DNA from: Octopus sinensis
Lineage: Eukaryota
Length of the DNA stretch: 12,558 nucleotides
NCBI RefSeq assembly: GCF_006345805.1
Contig: NW_021826540.1
Coordinates: forward strand, 1 to 12,558
Reading direction: 5' to 3'
The stretch's first letter is position 1. The number at the start of each line of letters is the position of its first letter. Shown here piece by piece: positions 1,991 to 11,305 of the stretch. The notes beneath the pieces are model-generated. The model had not been told where the DNA came from, did no database searches, and saw nothing but the letters and a program-made list of their open reading frames with translations. Made by a program: the position numbers and the translations under genes.

Positions 1991-2462
1991 ATTCAAGGCG
2001 AATTAGGGGTTGTGAATCAACCCAACTAAGGGATAGTATCTATCCAATATACTGCTGGTAATATACCCAATTATTACTACACAACTGTTGAGTATTGCGT
2101 GGCAATCACACTATTGAGCGTAGTAAATGAGCGAGGGTAAAAAGTGGTTTACCCTTAATTTATACGGCAAGAAGAAAATGGAGGGGATCCAGAGGTAGTA
2201 TGCATCAACTGTTAGACATTACATCATGTCTGTATATTGATTTTAAACAATTACGAGAATATATATATACATATGTAAAGATTGTGTTTTGCATACGTAA
2301 GTACCGTTAGCTTCTAGAATAGAGAAAGAAGAGCAGTTTCTTACAGCTGTTTCAGCCAAGAGGTCACGGTACCCCACATGTTATTTACATCTTTTCTGTG
2401 TACTGTAGTGATCGGTAGATAAAATTAGGGTACTTTGGTGTGCCTCTACGCTTCATCAGGGT
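1991..2462. mobile_element. (TA)n-flanked non-coding interspersed repeat of unknown class
   Basis: Sharp boundaries at TA tracts, several short hairpins, and a terminal CTTCATCAG (CTGATGAAG on - strand). No TIRs or ORF seen. Confidence 0.35.
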
Positions 2463-2618
<156 letters not shown>

Positions 2619-2683
2619 GTATTTTATAATTACGAGTATAATTATAATTAGGGTTCAGCAATTTTACCTTTATTATTATTGAT

Positions 2684-2693
2684 TATATATATA

Positions 2694-2742
<49 letters not shown>

Positions 2743-2893
2743 ACACCCCCACATATATATATCCATATACATATATGTATATAAATATATATATATATAC
2801 ACACACACACAACACATTATAATATATATATGTGTGTGTATGTATGTATGTATGTATGTATGTATGTATGTATGTATGTATATGTACATATAT
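2684..2893. repeat. (TA)n/(CA)n/(TATG)n compound microsatellite
   Basis: Directly visible. Confidence 0.95.
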
Positions 2894-3115
2894 TGAGAGA
2901 GGAGACTGAAACGTGCGACAGGTAAACACAGACGGGACGCGTCCTTGGTTTACACATTGCACTCCAATCTTCAGAGTGGTGCGACGCGGGGGATCGACCT
3001 CGCAATAGGCTAGCGTGCGAATTACGAGAAACAATAAGACATAGAAAAATAAGAGAAAAAAAATGACACGCAGAAAACAGGTGTGGTGTGAAGCACTGAA
3101 TACATTACCTGTTTT

Positions 3116-3744: not shown

Positions 3745-4097
3745 AGGGTAAACGGTAGAGACTCCTTTTCGTCATGAATGACCATGGGATTGTATCTAAA
3801 AAGTTCACCTCCGAGGCACAAGTCTAGGCAATGATGCTTTTTATGGAAGGCCAGCAGTTGCCCATTGATACCAGCCTCCCCTCTCTACACCACCGATGTT
3901 GCCCATGGGAAGGGCAAAGGTCGATACAGCTTGGCACCAGTGACGTCAAAACTCACCTCTACAGCTGAGGGAACTGGAGTAACGAGGAATAAAGTGTCTT
4001 GTTCAAGAACACAACACACAACCCGGGCCGCGAATTGATCTCAATACCTCTTGATTATGAGCCCGATGTTCTAACCACTGTGCCGTGCGCCTTCACA
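3745..4097 (-). mobile_element. tRNA-derived CORE-type SINE, full length, tail type 1
   Basis: The - strand has an A-box-like CGGCACAGTGG and B-box-like GATCAATTC, then GTGTTCTTGAACAAGACACTTTATTCCTCGTTACTCCAGTTCCCTCAGCTGTAGA resembling the CORE domain (MIR-like CCTTGGGCAAGTCACTT...CTCATCTGTAAAATG). The tail ends GGAGTCTCTACCGTTTACCCT, and the same tail recurs at 10230-10282. Confidence 0.85.
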
Positions 4098-4120
4098 CAC
4101 ACACACACACACACATATAT

Positions 4121-4356
4121 TCACGTGATCGATATACATTGCTGGTTACAATGTGCTTTCGAATGATGACACCTCGCTGATTAGGCGAGGACAACATTTC
4201 TCTTGCCGTCGTAGGGGTCAGCCAGACAGGAGCAACGTGAAATGAAGTGTTTGGCTAAAGAACCCAACGAACCGCCTGGTCCTGGGCCGGGAATTGACCC
4301 AACGATGTAGCGATCGTGAGTGCAACGCATTAAGCACCTGGCCACGCGCCTTCACA
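4121..4356 (-). mobile_element. tRNA-derived CORE-type SINE, tail type 2, internally deleted
   Basis: The - strand reads GTGAAGGCGCGTGGCCAGGTGC...CTCACGATC...GGGTCAATTCCC, then a CORE-like segment, then a tail ending TCGATCACGTG, homologous to 6399-6714. Confidence 0.85.
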
Positions 4357-4859
4357 CATACACACACACATAGCTGAAGCTAACACAGAACTTTTGAATT
4401 TGAGGAATATTCAGCAACTTTGGCAGTCACAGCAAATTACGTGGATCTTGTTCTTCTGGGAATGATGTTCGTCTCGCCCCTATATACAATACATCGTGTT
4501 TTTAACACGCGTCCATGAAGAGGTTTTGTTTCAGTCAAAATCTACCGCATCATACCTTGCATATACGTTAAGTATGATACGCAGAAAGCTATTTTATTTT
4601 AATGCTGTTTGAATTGCGGACACCGAGTTTTATTCAGCGTGGCCGCTTTATGCAACATCAGTGAATATATTATTCACTCTTCCCTATGTGTCAAGGGAGA
4701 CATGTTTCGTAGCGACTACACGTTATTAATAAGGCTCAAGGAAGTCGACAAACGTCTGATGTTCTCGTGGCCTACTGTTGGCATGATTTTTGCCTCGCTC
4801 TGTTGTTTATTGTGTTTGTAACACGACATGTCTACGAAAAGATTTCCTTTTTTTCCCAG

Positions 4860-4920: not shown

Positions 4921-5090
4921 GTGGGTGTACCGAGAATGAACTGGTTGTTTATAAACGTCTTCATTTAAAAACAGACACGGAGTCTGTTAACATAGCAACT
5001 TGAGTGACATATTAAGAAACCTTACAATGTTATATCATTACTAAAAATAGACAAGCATTTACATCAAGTTGCATTATTAACTAGACGGAA

Positions 5091-5316
5091 GGCAGCGAGG
5101 TGGCAGAATCATTACAACGCTGGGGAAAAGGCTTAGCAGCATTTTGTCGGTCTTTACGTTCTGAGTTCAAATTCCGCCGACGTCGACTTTGCCTTTCATC
5201 CTTTCAGGATCGATAAGTTAAGTACCAGTGAAACACTGGGTTCGATGTAATCGACTAGTCACCCCCCCCCCCAAAAAAAATTTCAGGCCTTGTGCCTATT
5301 GTAGAAAGGTTTATTA
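5091..5316 (+). mobile_element. tRNA-derived SINE with GCCTTTCATCCTTTC...GTCGATAA...AGTACCAG central domain, tail b
   Basis: A-box TGGCAGAATCATTA and B-box GAGTTCAAATTCC (5163-5175). Homologous to the three copies at 8400-9050. The tail CCCC..AAATTTCAGGCCTTGTGCCT is shared with the 8636 copy. Confidence 0.9.
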
Positions 5317-5342: not shown

Positions 5343-5762
5343 GCGCAGGCGTGGCTGTGTGGTAAGAAGTTTGCTTCCCAACGACGTAGTTTGGGTTCAG
5401 ACCCACTGTGTGGTACCTTGGGCAAGGGTCTTCTATAGTTTCGGGCCGACCAAAGCCTTGTGAACGGATTTGGTCGAAAGAAGCCCGTCGTGTTTGTGTA
5501 CACACACGCACACGCGCGCGCACGCACATACACACACTCACACACACAAACAAATGTACATGTATGTGTGGGTGTTCTCCACTACCGCTTGAAAACCGGT
5601 GTTGGGATGTGTCCCCGAAACTTAGCAGGTCGGCAAACTCGACCGATAGAATAAATACCAGGCTTTAAAAAAAGTATTGGGGTCGATAAGTTTCGACTAA
5701 ATTTCTTCAAGGCGGTGCCCCAGCATGGCCACAGTCTCATGACAAAAACAAGTAAAAGAATA
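5343..5762 (+). mobile_element. Bipartite tRNA-derived SINE with internal microsatellite, full length
   Basis: A-box TGGCTGTGTGGT and B-box GGGTTCAGACCC, then CCTTGGGCAAG, a CA-rich linker at about 5491-5572, and a 3' module ending CCAGCATGGCCACAG...ACAAGTAAAAGAATAA. Degenerate TSD-like flanks ATTAGTTTTCCT (5328) and ATTAGCTTTTCT (5763). Confidence 0.9.
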
Positions 5763-5973
5763 ATTAGCTTTTCTGATCAGAGTTTAATTTTAGGCTGTAA
5801 TATTTTGTGTCTTGAGAGGAATGATAACAAGAAGCAGAACGTTGGTCTTGGGGATGTCTCAAAATTCCGGAATTAGTCAGTTGGGCGTGGCTGTTTGGAT
5901 GCTGGCGATATGGCATGGCTCACTGGACACTGAATCTGTTTTGGTGAAAGTACTTTGTGCCGCGGGAGGCAAA

Positions 5974-6133: not shown

Positions 6134-6398
6134 CAATTTATTTATTGAACACAATTGACATAAACCCTTTCCTTATCCTCACGCGCACAAACACGTGGAC
6201 AGGTAGGGTCAGAACGAGAGAAACATTAAAACGTATAATATCAGATAAGTCAGCGCCAAACTGACAACGACAAACCGGCAGCGCCACAACGACTGTGCCA
6301 AAATGTCTCAAACCTTCTATACTCCGTGTACTATTCAAACTAGCAAGGAGAAAGAATAGACAAAATAGACCACTAATTAACAACACTATATGTAGATG

Positions 6399-6714
6399 TG
6401 TGAAAGCTCGTGGTCTAGTGGTTAGGGTGTTGCACTCACGATCGTTAGATAGTCGGTTCGATTCCCGGGTCGGGCCGGGCTGGGCCGCGTGTTGTGTTCT
6501 TGAGCAAAACACTTAATTTCACGTTACCCCAGTCCACTCAGATGTAAATGGGCCATCCTACGACAGACTATCCTTCCGATCGGGGGTAGGAATGTTGGTC
6601 TGCTCGCCTAGTCAACCGGGTGGCATTAATCGAACGATAAAGCAATGCAAAGCGCATTGTGACCAGCGTTGTATAACAACAGCTAATAGTCTGGTCGATC
6701 ACGTGGTCCCGTGG
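6399..6714 (+). mobile_element. tRNA-derived CORE-type SINE, tail type 2, full length with 10-bp target-site duplication
   Basis: A-box TGGTCTAGTGG, CTCACGATC loop, B-box GGTTCGATTCC, CORE-like CTTGAGCAAAACACTTAATTTCAC...CTCAGATGTAAATGGG. Perfect TSD TATGTAGATG at 6389-6398 and 6715-6724. Confidence 0.92.
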
Positions 6715-7354
6715 TATGTAGATGCAGGCGTAAATTTTTTTCAAGGTGAGCAATGAAGTTACTAAAAGTTTGCGCAGAGGAACACTTCGAGGAAGAAACC
6801 ACGGCTAAAATTTCAGCTAAAATATTAACGAAATATCGCATGTCAGAAATACAACCTAAAGATTTACCACAATAATCTTGTACCAAGGTTTTCCATCGTC
6901 TTGTAAGCCTATGGTGGTACTTTAAAGTAAGACAGTAGAAAAAGAAGGAATACAGCTAACATATTTTGTTTATAACTAATGAAGGAAAAAGTGAGAAAAC
7001 ACGACAGCTACAGGACACTAAAATGGCTTCACTGTTGGGTTTTATGATAAAATGAGAAGCCAACACACCAGGCAGTAAAATATGTGATCGCAATTAATAA
7101 TAACGGTGAATCAATGACACCAGAATGAGTTAGAGAAGACTAGAACAGTAACTTGGCAAAGATGGCAGCAGGAAGGGTGGTGTTAGAGATGGTGTTGGCG
7201 TTAAATGACGCATTTTAATGAAGGTAATGTTTTATACTGGTTGGACAATTGGAAAAGAAAAGAAAAAGACTGGTTTTATTGCAGTTGGTCTTTATGGGAA
7301 ACGATGGAACGTAGAAAGACGGAAGGGAAACATATCTATATGGTATCAAGCATT

Positions 7355-7741
7355 GGCGTATTCTTAAGAAATTCGCTTTGCAACGATAGGGTGACACCTT
7401 GCGTTGTATCTTCTATTACAACTCTCAGCCGACCAAAGCCTTGAGTAAATCTCTGAGACGGAAACTACGTGGAAGCCCACCGTATGTGTATGAATGTATC
7501 TGCGCGTGTGTGTGTGTGTGAGTCGTATCTGTGTTAGTCACCCACCACTGCTTGACGATTTGGTGTTCGTGTATTTATGCTCTCGTAACTTAGCGGACCG
7601 ACAAAAGAGAACCGATAGAATAAGTACCAGGCTATGAAACAAATAGGTACTGGGACCGATTTATTTGACTAAAAATTCCTCAAGGTGGTGCCGCCCCAGC
7701 ATGGCCGCAGACTAATGACTGAAACAAGTAAACGGAAGAAG

Positions 7742-7742
<1 letters not shown>
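7355..7742 (+). mobile_element. Bipartite SINE with internal microsatellite, degraded 5' head
   Basis: Contains GCCGACCAAAGCCTTG, GACGGAAAC, a TG-rich linker, and a 3' module GATAGAATAAGTACCAGGC...CCCCAGCATGGCCGCAG...TGACTGAAACAAGTAAA, all matching 5343-5762. Confidence 0.85.
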
Positions 7743-7773
<31 letters not shown>

Positions 7774-7837: not shown

Positions 7838-8008
7838 ATGTCGCTTGACTACCGGTGTTGGCTTGTTTACGTCCTCATAATATGAGCGGTTCGGCAGAAA
7901 GGGTCCGATAGACTTACAATAAATGCTCCGTGACGGGTTGATTTGTTCGACTAACCCTACAACGCTTTCCTCCAGCATGGCCGCGATCTGTTGATTGAAA
8001 CGAACAAC
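7838..8008 (+). mobile_element. Isolated 3' module of the bipartite SINE
   Basis: TCGCTTGACTACCGGTGTTGG...GCGGTTCGGCA...CCAGCATGGCCGC matches the 3' modules at about 5580-5760 and 7545-7742, with no tRNA head. Confidence 0.8.
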
Positions 8009-8378: not shown

Positions 8379-8399
8379 GGTTTTTAATATATCCTTGAA

Positions 8400-8637
8400 G
8401 GCGGCGAGCTGACAGAAGTGTTAGCACGCCGGGCGAAATGCGTAGCCGTATTTTGTCTGCCGTTACGTTCTGAGTTCAAATTCCGCCGAGGTCGACTTTG
8501 CCTTTCATCTTTCGGGGTCGGATTAAGTAAATTACAGTACCAGTTACGCACTGGGGCGATGTAATCGACTTAATCCCTTTGTCTGTCCTTGTTTGTCCCC
8601 TCTATGTTAAGCCCCTTGTGGGCAATAAAGAAATAAG
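8400..8637 (+). mobile_element. tRNA-derived SINE (5091 family), tail a
   Basis: GGCGGCGAGCTGACAGAAGTGTTAGC head, B-box GAGTTCAAATTCC, central domain, and tail TAATCCCTTTGTCTGTCC...GGGCAATAAAGAAATAAG. Confidence 0.92.
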
Positions 8638-8831
8638 AATTGTTAGCATGCCGGGTGAAATACTTAGCGGCATTTCGCTTGTCTCTACGTTCTGAGTTCA
8701 AATTCCGTTGGGGTCGACTTTGCTTTTCATCCTTTTGGGGTCGATAAACTAAGTACCAGTCAAATACTGGGGTCAGTGTGATCGACTTTCCCATTCCACC
8801 AAACTTCGGGCCTTGTATCTTTAGTAGAAAA

Positions 8832-8921: not shown

Positions 8922-9050
8922 GGTGAGCTGGCAGAATCGTTAGCACGCCGAGCGAAATGCTTACCGGCATTTCGTTTCTCTCTACGTTCTGAGTTCAAAT
9001 TCCGCATAGGCCGGCTTTGCCTTTTATCGTTTCGGGTTCGATACAATAAG
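8922..9050 (+). mobile_element. tRNA-derived SINE (5091 family), 3'-truncated
   Basis: GGTGAGCTGGCAGAATCGTTAGC head, GAGTTCAAATTCC, and a degenerate central domain ending near 9050. Confidence 0.88.
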
Positions 9051-9377
9051 TTCGAAACAATAATTTTTTTTAGGAAATTCGGACATCGTTCTTACTGCTA
9101 AGCATTCAACTTCAAATTACATTTGTTAATTGTTGGAAGTCAAATAGACTCTGATGTACATATAGTGTTATCGTTTTGAGTGGAGGTTCAATACGAAGTT
9201 TTGAACTCATTATCTTGTGGTTAGTAATCCATTACTTTAAATTTGAAGCCATTAAGTCTTCAAACATTTTTACTGGGTTTAGTCTTTCGACTGTCGCCAC
9301 GATGAAGTATCACCTTCAAAAAGTTAATTGATCATACTGACCTCAGCACATATTTCAATCTGGCATTTATTTTATAG

Positions 9378-9441
9378 ATCTCTGCTTGATGAACTGCTAA
9401 CTTTGAGACAGTGGGACACAATACACGAGTTAACAATAAAT
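9378..9441 (+). CDS. Internal coding exon (64 nt, phase 2 to phase 0): (K)SLLDELLTLRQWDTIHELTIN
   Basis: Branch site TACTGAC at 9335-9341, acceptor atttattttaTAG ending at 9377, strong donor AT|GTAAGC. The phase completes the AA|A Lys codon from exon 4860-4920, and the peptide looks like an amphipathic helix. Confidence 0.8.
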
Positions 9442-9747: not shown

Positions 9748-9778
9748 CACCCGGGCAACGCCGGGGTGCATTGCCATT
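9748..9778 (+). mobile_element. Helitron-like 3' terminal hairpin relic
   Basis: CCCGGGCAACGCCGGG GC-rich hairpin of the type seen at invertebrate Helitron 3' ends. The expected downstream CTAG is not intact (GCCATT instead). Confidence 0.4.
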
Positions 9779-9780
9779 AT

Positions 9781-9971
9781 TTTTCTTTCATTTCTTTTAC
9801 TTGTTTCGGTCATTTGACTGCGGCCATGCTGGAGCACCACCTTTAGTCGTGCAAATCGACACCAGGACTTATTCTTTGTAAGCCAAGTACTTATTTTATT
9901 GGTCTCTTTAAGCCAAACCGCTAAGTTACAGGGACGTAAACACCTCAATGTCGGATGTCAAGCGATGGTGG

Positions 9972-10043
<72 letters not shown>

Positions 10044-10185
10044 CGACGAGCTTCTTTCAGTTTCCGTCTACCAAATCCACTCACAGGTCTTTAATTGGCC
10101 CGAGGTAAAAGAAGAAGACACTTGCCCAAGGTGCCACGCGAAACCATGTAGTTGGGGGGAAAGCTTCTTACCACATAGCCTCTCT

Positions 10186-10187
<2 letters not shown>
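9781..10187 (-). mobile_element. Bipartite SINE with internal microsatellite, B-box deleted
   Basis: The - strand reads GGCTATGTGGTAAGAAGCTT...CATGGTTTC[deletion]GCGTGGCACCTTGGGCAAGTGTC, then a (TA)n(TG)n(CG)n linker at 9972-10042 and a complete 3' module. Confidence 0.9.
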
Positions 10188-10231
<44 letters not shown>

Positions 10232-10356: not shown

Positions 10357-10460
10357 CAGATAGATAGACAGATACACACACACACATGTATGTATGTATG
10401 GATCCCTATGCATATATAAATGTGTGTGTGTATGTGTGTGTGTGTGTGTGTGTGTGTATT
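10188..10460. repeat. (TA)n, (GATA)n and (TG)n microsatellites interrupted by a SINE tail fragment
   Basis: Directly visible. Confidence 0.9.
10230..10282 (-). mobile_element. 3' tail fragment of CORE-type SINE, tail type 1
   Basis: The - strand TGGTCATTCGAGGACCGAAGGGAGTCTTTAC...TTTACCC matches the 3' end of 3745-4097. Confidence 0.75.
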
Positions 10461-10552
10461 TGTAAGTGAGCATGCGATCGTGTGCATGTGTGTAGAAGTG
10501 CGTGTGTATGCAAGTGACAGTATGTTTGTGCGCATGTGTTAGTGTTTGTACC

Positions 10553-10677
10553 TTCGCCAATAAAAAAAAAGTACCATACTTAAAATTCCGGGTATCATTT
10601 ATTCGTTTTAACTCTAGAAGGTGGTGCTCCAGCATGGTCTCAGTCCAATGACTGAAACAAGCAAAAGAATAAAAAGT
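10553..10677 (+). mobile_element. Isolated, partly deleted 3' module of the bipartite SINE
   Basis: GAAGGTGGTGCTCCAGCATGGTCTCAGTCCAATGACTGAAACAAGCAAAAGAATAAAA. Confidence 0.8.
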
Positions 10678-10767
10678 GTACAAATATGTTTGCTTCTGTT
10701 GCAAAATCAGCGACTGTACATCGCTTGAAATTGTAAATATTGCGAGCAGACGCGAGCTACTGCTATC

Positions 10768-10847
10768 TCTAGCAGACGAGGTGTCCAGTGCTGAAGAGAG
10801 GCAGAAATAGCTCGAAACCAGGCCGGTCTACTGGTCCCGTCGCTAGA
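10768..10847 (+). ncRNA. Type I hammerhead ribozyme with canonical core and extended stem I
   Basis: Stem I CCAGUG (10785-90) pairs with UACUGG (10829-34). Core CUGAAGA at 10791-97. Stem II GAG/CUC with loop GCAGAAAUAG. GAAA at 10814-17. Stem III AC-C/G-GU with loop AGGCC. Cleavage triplet GUC, predicted cut after 10828. Distal stem I pairs: GG/CC, GACG/CGUC, UCUAGC/GCUAGA. Confidence 0.88.
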
Positions 10848-11048
10848 AGGTGGTAGGGGTTCCCTCCCCTGCTCGCAATACCTCGGATGCAGCTGTGCAT
10901 CGTTAACCAGCTGGAGGGGATGTCCTCTTGGGGGTTAAAAAATCGCAGTAAAGTCCGTTGGGGTTGAAGAGGCTACGAACATTACTTGTTAGTACAACTA
11001 CTGCGTTGATCTCTTAGAGACATTTTAGAACTAGCATTTTGCTTGTTG

Positions 11049-11063
11049 CATACATACATACAT

Positions 11064-11152
<89 letters not shown>

Positions 11153-11233
11153 TGACAGACAGACAGAGAAAGAAAAAGAGAGATGGACTGATATGTAAGA
11201 GTGTGTGTGTGAATGTGTGGGTGGCTGGCTGTA

Positions 11234-11305
<72 letters not shown>
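11049..11305. repeat. (TACA)n/(CA)n/(TA)n and long (CA)n microsatellites
   Basis: Directly visible. The pure (CA)n tract is at about 11238-11304. Confidence 0.96.

What the first reader, a model, noticed from the sequence alone, without database searches (positions are those of the whole stretch)
10768..10847. Apparently intact canonical type I hammerhead ribozyme
Seen in sequence: every conserved core nucleotide is present (CUGAAGA, GAAA, GUC). All three stems form, and stem I extends about 18 bp with a UGU/U internal loop. Established knowledge: natural hammerheads such as Schistosoma Sm-alpha use a loop II to stem I bulge tertiary contact. Loop II here ends in AAAUAG as in Sm-alpha, and the stem I loop supplies a U. 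The short stem III with near-palindromic CCAGGCCGG resembles hammerheads that can act as dimers (newt satellite 2, Penelope-like elements, retrozymes). Inference: it may be catalytically active, cutting after position 10828.
Basis: partly seen in the sequence, partly recalled or inferred. Interest (0 to 1): 0.85.

Follow-up and report, generated by a model that had tools for sequence, protein, structure and literature searches.

The report
Solitary type I hammerhead ribozyme motif
The window contains one complete-looking copy of the small self-cutting "hammerhead" RNA motif, of the kind animal genomes carry in mobile repeats; it is a real but ordinary example, and whether it actually cuts has not been tested.

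Summary
At 10768-10847 (+) every invariant hammerhead core base is present (CUGAAGA 10791-10797, GAA 10814-10816, A15.1-U16.1 10817/10827, C17 10828). Three helices form in the type I topology, which puts cleavage between 10828 and 10829. A descriptor scan finds this site alone in the window and none in 2000 shuffles. Three points need qualifying. (1) Rfam does not call it: no hit at gathering, and Hammerhead_HH9 scores 20.8 bits against a cut-off of 52. (2) Helix II has only 3 clean pairs, followed by a G.G mismatch or bulge. The base pair of helix I is G.U. Loop 1 (UGU/U) lacks the UAC of Schistosoma and HH9, although loop 2 shares AAAUA. (3) The palindrome in helix III is out of register, so a newt-style active dimer is not favoured. 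A new finding is that helix I continues for about 44 bp, which puts the ribozyme at the tip of a 143-nt hairpin (10738-10880). A competing fold 2.9 kcal/mol lower sequesters helix II. Only one copy is present, with no RT or GIY-YIG ORF, in SINE- and microsatellite-rich non-coding DNA. It is most likely a solo monomer or fragment of a Penelope-dependent hammerhead repeat (non-LTR retrozyme or pLTR). It is a new member of a known kind, of modest interest.

The parts
10738..10880 (+). 143-nt imperfect hairpin with the hammerhead at its tip. In the hammerhead-compatible fold, helix I extends to about 44 bp.
   Evidence: Constrained folds and the helix list. The helices are: 12 perfect bp 10738-10749/10869-10880; 5 bp 10754-10758/10858-10862; 9 bp 10760-10768/10848-10856; 5 bp 10769-10773/10842-10846; 4 bp; 2 bp; 6 bp. 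Fold z-score is -3.77 on the + strand and -3.52 on the - strand.
10768..10790 (+). It includes the loop 1 bases UGU (10782-10784) and the bulged A10774 and A10779.
10791..10797 (+). Catalytic core C3-A9, CUGAAGA (N7 = A)
   Evidence: Sequence. Aligned to the HH9 core.
10798..10813 (+). Helix II (GAG/CUC, plus G.G or a bulged G with C-G) and loop 2 ending in AAAUA
   Evidence: Compared with Sm1/N79 loop 2, CAAAUA.
10814..10816 (+). Core G12 A13 A14
10817..10827 (+). Helix III: A15.1-U16.1, C-G, C-G, with the 5-nt loop AGGCC
   Evidence: The isolated hairpin is -1.5 kcal/mol.
10828..10829 (+). C17 and N1.1. The predicted scissile bond lies between 10828 and 10829.
   Evidence: Position follows from the standard hammerhead numbering applied to the sequence. 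Cleavage itself is inferred, not shown.
10829..10847 (+).
10755..10764 (+). Upstream segment GAGCUACUGC. In the minimum-energy fold it pairs with GCAG..UAGCUC (10801-10813) and so competes with helix II.
   Evidence: MFE structures of the 134-321-nt contexts
10673..11045 (+). Candidate repeat unit carrying the hammerhead (about 360-370 nt, GC 0.48). It is bounded by the end of a SINE copy upstream and a (CATA)n(CA)n(TA)n microsatellite downstream. The boundaries are uncertain.
   Evidence: SINE mapping, sequence, GC content. There is no second copy in the window and no target-site duplication of 8 nt or more.

Best explanation
This is a genuine, sequence-intact type I hammerhead ribozyme motif. 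It is carried by a single (solo) copy of a short non-coding repeat of the class that Penelope-like elements mobilise in animal genomes. That means either a monomer of a non-LTR retrozyme or a fragment of a PLE pseudo-LTR.

If the + strand is transcribed, the flanks 10768-10790 and 10829-10847 pair as helix I, and further out to 10738/10880. Helices II and III close locally. The CUGAAGA and GAA core then positions the 2'-OH of C10828 to attack the next phosphate. The products would be a 2',3'-cyclic phosphate on C10828 and a 5'-OH on U10829.

Only one ribozyme is present, so the locus can cut a transcript in two but cannot release a unit-length RNA for circularisation. It is therefore most likely a dead-end insertion rather than an active retrozyme locus. 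An alternative, slightly more stable fold of the same hairpin probably limits cleavage to a folding window during transcription.

Shown: the motif, the helices, their non-randomness, the solitary state, and the absence of coding capacity. Inferred: homology to retrozyme or PLE hammerheads, catalytic activity, and the kinetic switch.
For: The core is complete and the three helices form in type I topology. The descriptor hit is unique in the window and absent from 2000 shuffles. Helix I extends to about 44 bp, and the 143-nt hairpin folds with z = -3.8.

The architecture matches the published description of canonical metazoan type I hammerheads: helix I 6 bp then a loop, helix II about 4 bp, and a short helix III (PMC4209133). 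It also matches the short helix III reported as efficient in monomers of invertebrate retrozymes (PMC7229834). Loop 2 AAAUA is shared with Schistosoma Sm1/N79.

The unit has properties reported for animal retrozymes. It is about 360 nt against a reported 170-400 nt. Its GC is 0.48 against a reported <50%. It has no ORF, LTR, PBS or PPT (PMC7229834). Monomeric, dispersed copies of such families are described (preprint 10.64898/2026.07.22.740005). The flanking microsatellites fit the microsatellite insertion bias reported for PLEs (PMC8557442). The hammerhead fold lies only 2.7-2.9 kcal/mol above the MFE, without counting tertiary contacts.
Against: No relatives could be retrieved, so there is no copy number, consensus or covariation. 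The word-index protein search on an ORF across the motif, and exact look-ups of two window ORFs, found nothing. Metagenome, viral and prokaryote-genome pattern scans gave only an unrelated bacterial coding region.

Rfam hammerhead models score it below threshold. There is no tandem partner, target-site duplication or PLE ORF in the 12.5 kb.

Helix II has only three uninterrupted pairs, 1.1-2.1 is G.U, and loop 1 lacks the conserved UAC. Activity could therefore be low. The thermodynamically preferred fold in context is not the hammerhead.
Confidence: 0.65

Rival explanations
1. It is a host-retained (domesticated) single-copy hammerhead, analogous to the intronic HH9/HH10 ribozymes of amniotes. 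It would cut a host pre-mRNA or lncRNA in cis as a regulatory device. The long helix I and the alternative fold would act as a switch.
For: The best Rfam alignment is to HH9, full length. The copy is solitary and its core is intact, although a neighbouring SINE copy is only about 70-80% identical to its relatives. The competing fold lies within 3 kcal/mol.
Against: The HH9 score is 20.8 against a cut-off of 52. No exon or gene is detectable in the window. Nothing shows conservation across species. The setting is repeat-rich non-coding DNA.
Confidence: 0.08
2. It is a chance hammerhead-like core at the apex of a hairpin that exists for another reason, such as an inverted-repeat element or foldback DNA. 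In that case there is no ribozyme ancestry or activity.
For: The bare 6/3/3 motif is expected tens of times per Gb-scale genome (my estimate, consistent). Both strands fold equally well, as any DNA inverted repeat would. Rfam is below threshold. Helix II is imperfect.
Against: Given a pre-existing hairpin, the chance that its apex carries CUGANGA, helix II, GAAA, helix III and UH in the right order and spacing is about 1e-6 by my estimate. The motif also has the canonical 6-bp helix I followed by an internal loop, and a Schistosoma-like loop 2.
Confidence: 0.08
3. It is an Sm-alpha-type SINE: a Pol III-transcribed, tRNA-derived short retroposon that carries a hammerhead, as in Schistosoma.
For: It is a type I hammerhead with Sm-like loop 2 in a short non-coding unit. 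The window is full of SINEs.
Against: ARAGORN finds no tRNA-like sequence anywhere in the window. The abundant SINE of the window ends about 100 nt upstream, and its other copies carry no hammerhead downstream. No A-rich tail follows the unit.
Confidence: 0.04

Closest known systems
Non-LTR retrozymes of animals (type I hammerhead repeats; Cervera & de la Pena 2020, PMC7229834)
   Same: It has a type I hammerhead with a 6-bp helix I followed by a loop, and a short helix III. The unit is non-coding, a few hundred nt long and below 50% GC, with no LTR, PBS or PPT. The RNA is highly self-paired. Dispersed monomers are described for such families.
   Different: Only one unit is present, with no tandem array, so no unit-length or circular RNA can be released from this locus. 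Family membership by sequence could not be tested. Loop 1 lacks the archetypal UAC. No cephalopod example was found in the searchable literature.
Schistosoma mansoni Sm-alpha / Sm1 hammerhead (N79 derivative sequence in PMC12550524)
   Same: It has the same topology, a 6-bp proximal helix I, a helix II of about 4 positions, loop 2 ending in AAAUA, and a GUC cleavage triplet.
   Different: Loop 1 is UGU/U rather than GUAC/UCCA. Helix II is GAG(G)C/GCUC with a mismatch or bulge rather than GUCC/GGAC. N7 is A rather than U. The 1.1-2.1 pair is U.G. No tRNA-like SINE head is present.
Penelope-like element pLTR hammerheads (Cervera & de la Pena 2014, PMC4209133)
   Same: It is a hammerhead in a retroelement-type repeat flanked by microsatellites. 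The 2026 preprint derives retrozymes from PLE pLTRs.
   Different: PLE min-HHRs have a long helix II (7-8 bp), a short helix I (4-5 bp) and essentially no helix III. This motif is the opposite. No RT or GIY-YIG ORF is detectable in the window.
Rfam Hammerhead_HH9 (RF02275), the amniote intronic hammerhead
   Same: It is the best-scoring Rfam model, with a full-length alignment and an identical core and helix layout.
   Different: It scores 20.8 bits against a gathering score of 52. Sequence similarity outside the core is low.
Newt satellite 2 / axolotl hammerheads acting as dimers
   Same: Helix III is short and contains a GC-rich self-complementary stretch.
   Different: The palindrome is out of register with helix III. 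The active double-hammerhead pairing is unfavourable at +1.7 kcal/mol, and the favoured homodimer would bury C17. No second copy lies nearby.

Membership tests
Hammerhead ribozyme (any type) | Invariant core C3 U4 G5 A6 N7 G8 A9 / G12 A13 A14 / A15.1-U16.1 / H17 | tested here: met
   CUGAAGA 10791-10797, GAA 10814-10816, A10817-U10827, C10828
Hammerhead ribozyme (any type) | Three helices radiating from the core | tested here: met
   Helix I has 6 bp proximal and about 44 bp in all. Helix II has 3 bp plus 1. Helix III has 3 bp.
Hammerhead ribozyme (any type) | Reaches the curated score of an Rfam hammerhead model | tested here: not met
   No hit at gathering. The best is HH9 at 20.8 bits against 52.
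Hammerhead ribozyme (any type) | Site-specific self-cleavage giving a 2',3'-cyclic phosphate and a 5'-OH | not testable with these tools
   This needs in vitro transcription or RNA-end mapping.
Canonical metazoan type I hammerhead (as described in PMC4209133) | Helix I open, helices II and III capped by loops | tested here: met
Canonical metazoan type I hammerhead (as described in PMC4209133) | Helix I of 6 bp followed by loop 1, and helix II of 4 bp | tested here: inconclusive
   Helix I is exactly 6 bp followed by UGU/U. Position 4 of helix II is G.G, or a bulged G followed by C-G.
Canonical metazoan type I hammerhead (as described in PMC4209133) | Conserved loop 1 and loop 2 nucleotides for the tertiary contact | tested here: inconclusive
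   Loop 2 AAAUA is shared with Sm1/N79. Loop 1 is UGU/U, against GUAC/UCCA in Sm1 and UUAC/UAC in HH9.
Canonical metazoan type I hammerhead (as described in PMC4209133) | Short helix III (1-2 bp) capped by a small palindromic loop that allows an active dimer | tested here: not met
   Helix III has 3 pairs including 15.1-16.1 and a 5-nt loop. The in-register dimer helix costs +1.7 kcal/mol, and the palindrome is out of register.
Non-LTR retrozyme | Tandem repeats, each unit carrying a type I hammerhead | tested here: not met
   The window holds a single motif and a single copy of the unit. A monomeric derivative remains possible.
Non-LTR retrozyme | Unit of about 170-400 nt, GC below 50%, non-coding, no LTR/PBS/PPT | tested here: met
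   The unit is about 360-370 nt with GC 0.48-0.49. There are no Pfam domains. The boundaries are approximate.
Non-LTR retrozyme | Sequence relatives in the same genome; expression as linear and circular RNA | not testable with these tools
   No eukaryotic genome or transcriptome collection is available. Indirect searches were negative.
Penelope-like element (pLTR hammerhead) | Adjacent ORF with telomerase-like RT and GIY-YIG endonuclease | tested here: not met
   Pfam finds nothing on 68 of the stop-free segments >=50 aa, those passing an entropy filter against microsatellite-coded sequence and trimmed in places. The longest ORFs are microsatellite-coded.
Penelope-like element (pLTR hammerhead) | min-HHR architecture (helix II 7-8 bp, helix I 4-5 bp, helix III absent or minimal) | tested here: not met
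   Helix II has 3-4 bp, helix I has 6 or more bp, and helix III is present.
Sm-alpha-type SINE | tRNA-like Pol III promoter region upstream of the hammerhead | tested here: not met
   ARAGORN finds no tRNA-like gene in the window.

The most novel reading that the evidence does not exclude
The motif is the founding example of a cephalopod (or at least previously unsampled) retrozyme family. In this family the hammerhead is built into the tip of a ~44-bp double-stranded rod and is gated by an alternative pairing (10755-10764 with 10801-13). Under this reading it is a viroid-like conformational switch in an animal genome. Its long dsRNA stem could also make it a substrate for dsRNA-processing or editing enzymes.
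Probability: 0.1. Interest if true: 0.55.

Novelty: new member of a known kind. Interest (0 to 1): 0.3.

Why it matters
Type I hammerheads are already known to be scattered through animal genomes by retrozymes and Penelope-like elements, so one more copy changes little. It would matter modestly in three ways. It may extend the catalogue to a lineage for which I found no published report. It gives a concrete, easily assayed construct (10730-10890) in which an intact core coexists with an imperfect helix II, a G.U closing pair and a non-canonical loop 1. That makes it useful for asking how much peripheral deviation a natural hammerhead tolerates. Finally, the unusually long helix I with a near-isoenergetic competing fold is a natural test case for co-transcriptional gating of self-cleavage.

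Tried and rejected
(1) Rfam at gathering gave nothing. In E-value mode only HH9 appeared, sub-threshold. The many 'miRNA' matches lie at microsatellite-rich coordinates and are far below threshold, so I take them to be microsatellite artefacts.

(2) I looked for relatives through spurious ORFs. The search for homologous proteins with the 75-aa frame across the motif found nothing. The look-up of encoding contigs with two window ORFs found nothing on record.

(3) I ran DNA pattern scans. A specific pattern found nothing in metagenome or viral contigs. The looser pattern CCAGTGCTGANGAGN{10,16}CTCGAAAC gave 5 hits. All 5 hits share extended flanking similarity, three of them in Acidobacteria MAGs; I take them to be one conserved, probably coding, bacterial region, and I rejected them. 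A 17-mer from the window's SINE gave 11 viral-contig hits, which is about the number I expect by chance, so I did not pursue them.

(4) I looked for a second hammerhead, a tandem partner or another copy of the unit in the window. There is none.

(5) A Pfam scan of 68 stop-free segments >=50 aa (entropy-filtered) for PLE RT or GIY-YIG found none.

(6) I looked for a tRNA-like head, which would indicate an Sm-alpha-type SINE. There is none.

(7) I looked for target-site duplications around the unit. There are none of 8 nt or more.

(8) I tested the double-hammerhead (dimer) model. It is rejected on register and energy.

(9) The 12-nt direct match CTAGAAGGTGGT (10614 and 10843) might have marked a tandem-repeat junction. 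I rejected this because the first copy lies inside the SINE and a match of that length is within chance.

(10) I searched the literature for the exact sequence and for hammerheads in cephalopods. Nothing was found. The supplement of PMC7229834 holds no matching sequence.

Full report
WHAT IS THERE

Reading 10600-11000 and applying standard hammerhead numbering gives the following.
- The helix I 5' strand ends at G10790.
- The core C3-A9 is CUGAAGA, 10791-10797.
- Helix II is GAG/CUC (10798-10800 / 10811-10813). Its fourth position is either a G10801.G10810 mismatch or a bulged G10801 followed by C10802-G10810.
- Loop 2 ends in AAAUA.
- G12-A14 is GAA, 10814-10816.
- Helix III is A10817-U10827, C-G, C-G, with the loop AGGCC.
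- C17 is C10828.
- The helix I 3' strand starts at U10829.

The description is accurate apart from three unmentioned details: the A bulges, the wobble pair and the helix II irregularity.

IS IT MORE THAN CHANCE?

I wrote a descriptor requiring CUGANGA, helix II >=3 bp, GAAA, helix III >=3 bp, UH and helix I >=5 bp.
- It finds only this site on either strand of the window, and none in 2000 dinucleotide-preserving shuffles.
- A relaxed 4/2/2 version gives 0.0055 hits per shuffled window. That agrees with my analytic estimate of 9.5 expected against 11 observed over 50 Mb.
- The same arithmetic gives about 4e-9 per position for the bare 6/3/3 motif. That is roughly 1e-4 per window, but tens of hits per Gb-scale genome, so the bare motif alone would not be conclusive at genome scale.

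What settles it is the periphery.
- 9 bp, 10760-10768 / 10848-10856
- 5 bp, 10754-10758 / 10858-10862
- 12 perfect bp, 10738-10749 / 10869-10880

That makes about 44 bp in all, which puts the ribozyme at the tip of a 143-nt hairpin. The hairpin folds with z = -3.77, and no shuffle out of 200 folds as well.

THE RFAM CHECK

- There are no matches at gathering thresholds in the window.
- In E-value mode the only hammerhead-clan match is Hammerhead_HH9. It aligns full length (model 1-77, window 10774-10851) at 20.8 bits against a gathering score of 52.
- Its E-value is 0.0077 for a 301-nt search and 0.32 for the whole window.

The alignment shows an exact core and the same helix layout but little other similarity. 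I read this as a divergent hammerhead that narrow Rfam seeds do not reach, and I record it as a membership criterion that was not met.

ENERGETICS

For the 80-nt motif the hammerhead fold is -23.7 kcal/mol against an MFE of -26.4.

In 201-321 nt of context the MFE is a different structure. GAGCUACUGC (10755-10764) pairs with GCAG...UAGCUC (10801-10813) and so takes away the 3' strand of helix II. The best hammerhead-compatible structure is only 2.9 kcal/mol higher. Tertiary contacts are not modelled.

So there is a real competitor, but not a dominant one. This is the situation described for viroid and retrozyme hammerheads, which cleave during a transient folding window. That parallel rests on general knowledge and is not tested here.

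PERIPHERAL ELEMENTS

I checked the Sm1/N79 Schistosoma sequence in PMC12550524: GCAG-GUAC-AUCCAG-CUGAUGA-GUCC-CAAAUA-GGAC-GAAAC ... GUC-CUGGAU-UCCA-CUGC.
- The window's motif shares the 6-bp proximal helix I and the AAAUA of loop 2.
- Its loop 1 is UGU/U instead of GUAC/UCCA. The HH9 consensus has UUAC/UAC.

The loop-loop contact is therefore plausible but only half conserved. PMC7229834 notes that mussel retrozyme hammerheads lack most of the archetypal contact nucleotides.

THE DIMER SUGGESTION

AGGCCGGUCU (10820-10829) is self-complementary if G.U pairs are allowed. Its homodimer is -16.7 kcal/mol, but its centre lies between C10824 and G10825, whereas the axis of helix III is at G10822. 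That pairing would bury C17 and U16.1.

The in-register extended helix III needed for an active double hammerhead has three mismatches and evaluates to +1.7 kcal/mol. The monomer hairpin is -1.5. With three pairs and a pentaloop, helix III resembles the invertebrate type, which PMC7229834 reports as cleaving efficiently as a monomer. I therefore favour monomeric action, if there is any.

SURROUNDINGS

The window is eukaryote-like non-coding DNA.
- GC is 0.41, with dense microsatellites.
- There are no tRNA genes.
- There is no Pfam domain in 68 of the stop-free segments >=50 aa, filtered to exclude microsatellite-coded sequence.
- A SINE-like repeat occurs at least six times: 5560-5770, 7525-7745, 7842-8001, 9268-9404(-), 9791-9989(-) and 10557-10672.

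The last SINE copy ends about 100 nt upstream of the hammerhead. The other copies have no hammerhead downstream of them, so the ribozyme is not part of that SINE.

The hammerhead-bearing unit is at most about 10673-11045, which is about 370 nt at GC 0.48. A (CATA)n(CA)n(TA)n tract follows it. The unit has no second copy, partial tandem repeat or hammerhead partner in the window. It has no target-site duplication of 8 nt or more.

RELATIVES ELSEWHERE

None could be obtained.
- The collections at hand hold no eukaryotic genomes that can be searched by DNA.
- Protein-level tricks found nothing.
- Pattern scans of metagenome, viral and prokaryotic contigs gave either nothing or what looks like an unrelated conserved bacterial region.
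- Literature searches found no report of hammerheads in cephalopods and no occurrence of this sequence.

INTERPRETATION

The published framework has three parts.
- Most canonical type I hammerheads of animals sit in short tandem non-coding repeats, the non-LTR retrozymes. [quoted passage not shown]
- Penelope-like elements carry hammerheads in their pseudo-LTRs, usually as minimal variants (PMC4209133), and insert preferentially into microsatellites (PMC8557442).
- A 2026 preprint (10.64898/2026.07.22.740005) derives retrozymes from PLE pLTRs. It describes dispersed monomeric copies as probable non-transposing offspring.

The present motif has the canonical architecture, not the PLE-minimal one. 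It sits in a unit of the right size and composition next to microsatellites, and it is solitary. The best-supported reading is a solo monomer or fragment of such a family. It would be able to cut its own transcript after C10828 if transcribed and correctly folded, but it cannot yield a unit-length circular RNA.

My confidence that this is a bona fide hammerhead by descent is about 0.85. My confidence in the full statement, including the mobile-repeat origin, is about 0.65.

Rivals:
- A domesticated host ribozyme, 0.08.
- A chance core on an unrelated hairpin, 0.08.
- An Sm-alpha-type SINE, 0.04.

NOVELTY AND SCORE

This is a new member of a known kind. A specialist would not be surprised by a type I hammerhead in an invertebrate-like repeat landscape. 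The mildly unusual points are the very long helix I with a near-isoenergetic competitor fold, the imperfect helix II, and the possible taxonomic extension. Interest is 0.3. The decisive work is a genome-wide copy search with covariation analysis, plus a simple in vitro cleavage assay. Neither can be done with the tools available here.

Noticed in passing
window 5346-5770(+), 7332-7748(+), 7842-8001(+), 9268-9404(-), 9778-10201(-), 10557-10672(+): There are at least six copies (60-80% identical) of a SINE-like repeat. Its conserved 3' part reads ...GGTGCCCCAGCATGGCCGCAGTCTAATGACTGAAACAAGTAAA. Some alignments extend to about 420-450 nt. The copy at 10557-10672 is 5'-truncated and abuts the hammerhead unit.
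   Followed up: partly
window 5088-5307, 8397-8570, 8636-8830, 8922-9060: A second repeat family shows 74-80% identity. Three of its copies are nearly tandem (spacing 222 and 297 nt) and one is dispersed. Its identity is unknown.
   Followed up: no
window 3960-4099, 4225-4364 (+) and 6391-6546 (-): A third dispersed repeat family shows 69-75% identity. The two + strand copies are each followed by a (CA)n tract.
   Followed up: no
window 10820-10829: AGGCCGGUCU is a G.U-tolerant palindrome whose homodimer (-16.7 kcal/mol) would bury the cleavage site. It is out of register with helix III, so it would oppose rather than promote a double-hammerhead.
   Followed up: yes
window 10381-10474 and 11061-11154: The microsatellites on the two sides of the SINE-plus-hammerhead block are reverse complements of each other, (TGTA)n(TG)n against (CATA)n(CA)n, at 72-78% over about 90 nt. 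An 11-nt inverted match (10656-10666 / 11037-11047) lies just inside them. This could be coincidence in a microsatellite-rich region or a trace of an inverted duplication.
   Followed up: partly
window 2460-2900, 10360-10460, 11040-11280 and others: Microsatellite hairpins give many sub-threshold Rfam 'miRNA' matches (mir-3149, mir-297, mir-466, mir-1277) in E-value mode. All are far below gathering scores and appear on both strands, so they are artefacts.
   Followed up: yes
L001, L002, L014-L016: The pattern CCAGTGCTGANGAGN{10,16}CTCGAAAC hits one region conserved across Acidobacteria MAGs (Bryobacterales, Terriglobales) and two metagenome contigs. It looks like a coding sequence that contains CUGAUGAG...CUCGAAAC by chance. 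It is not a hammerhead fold and is unrelated to the window.
   Followed up: partly
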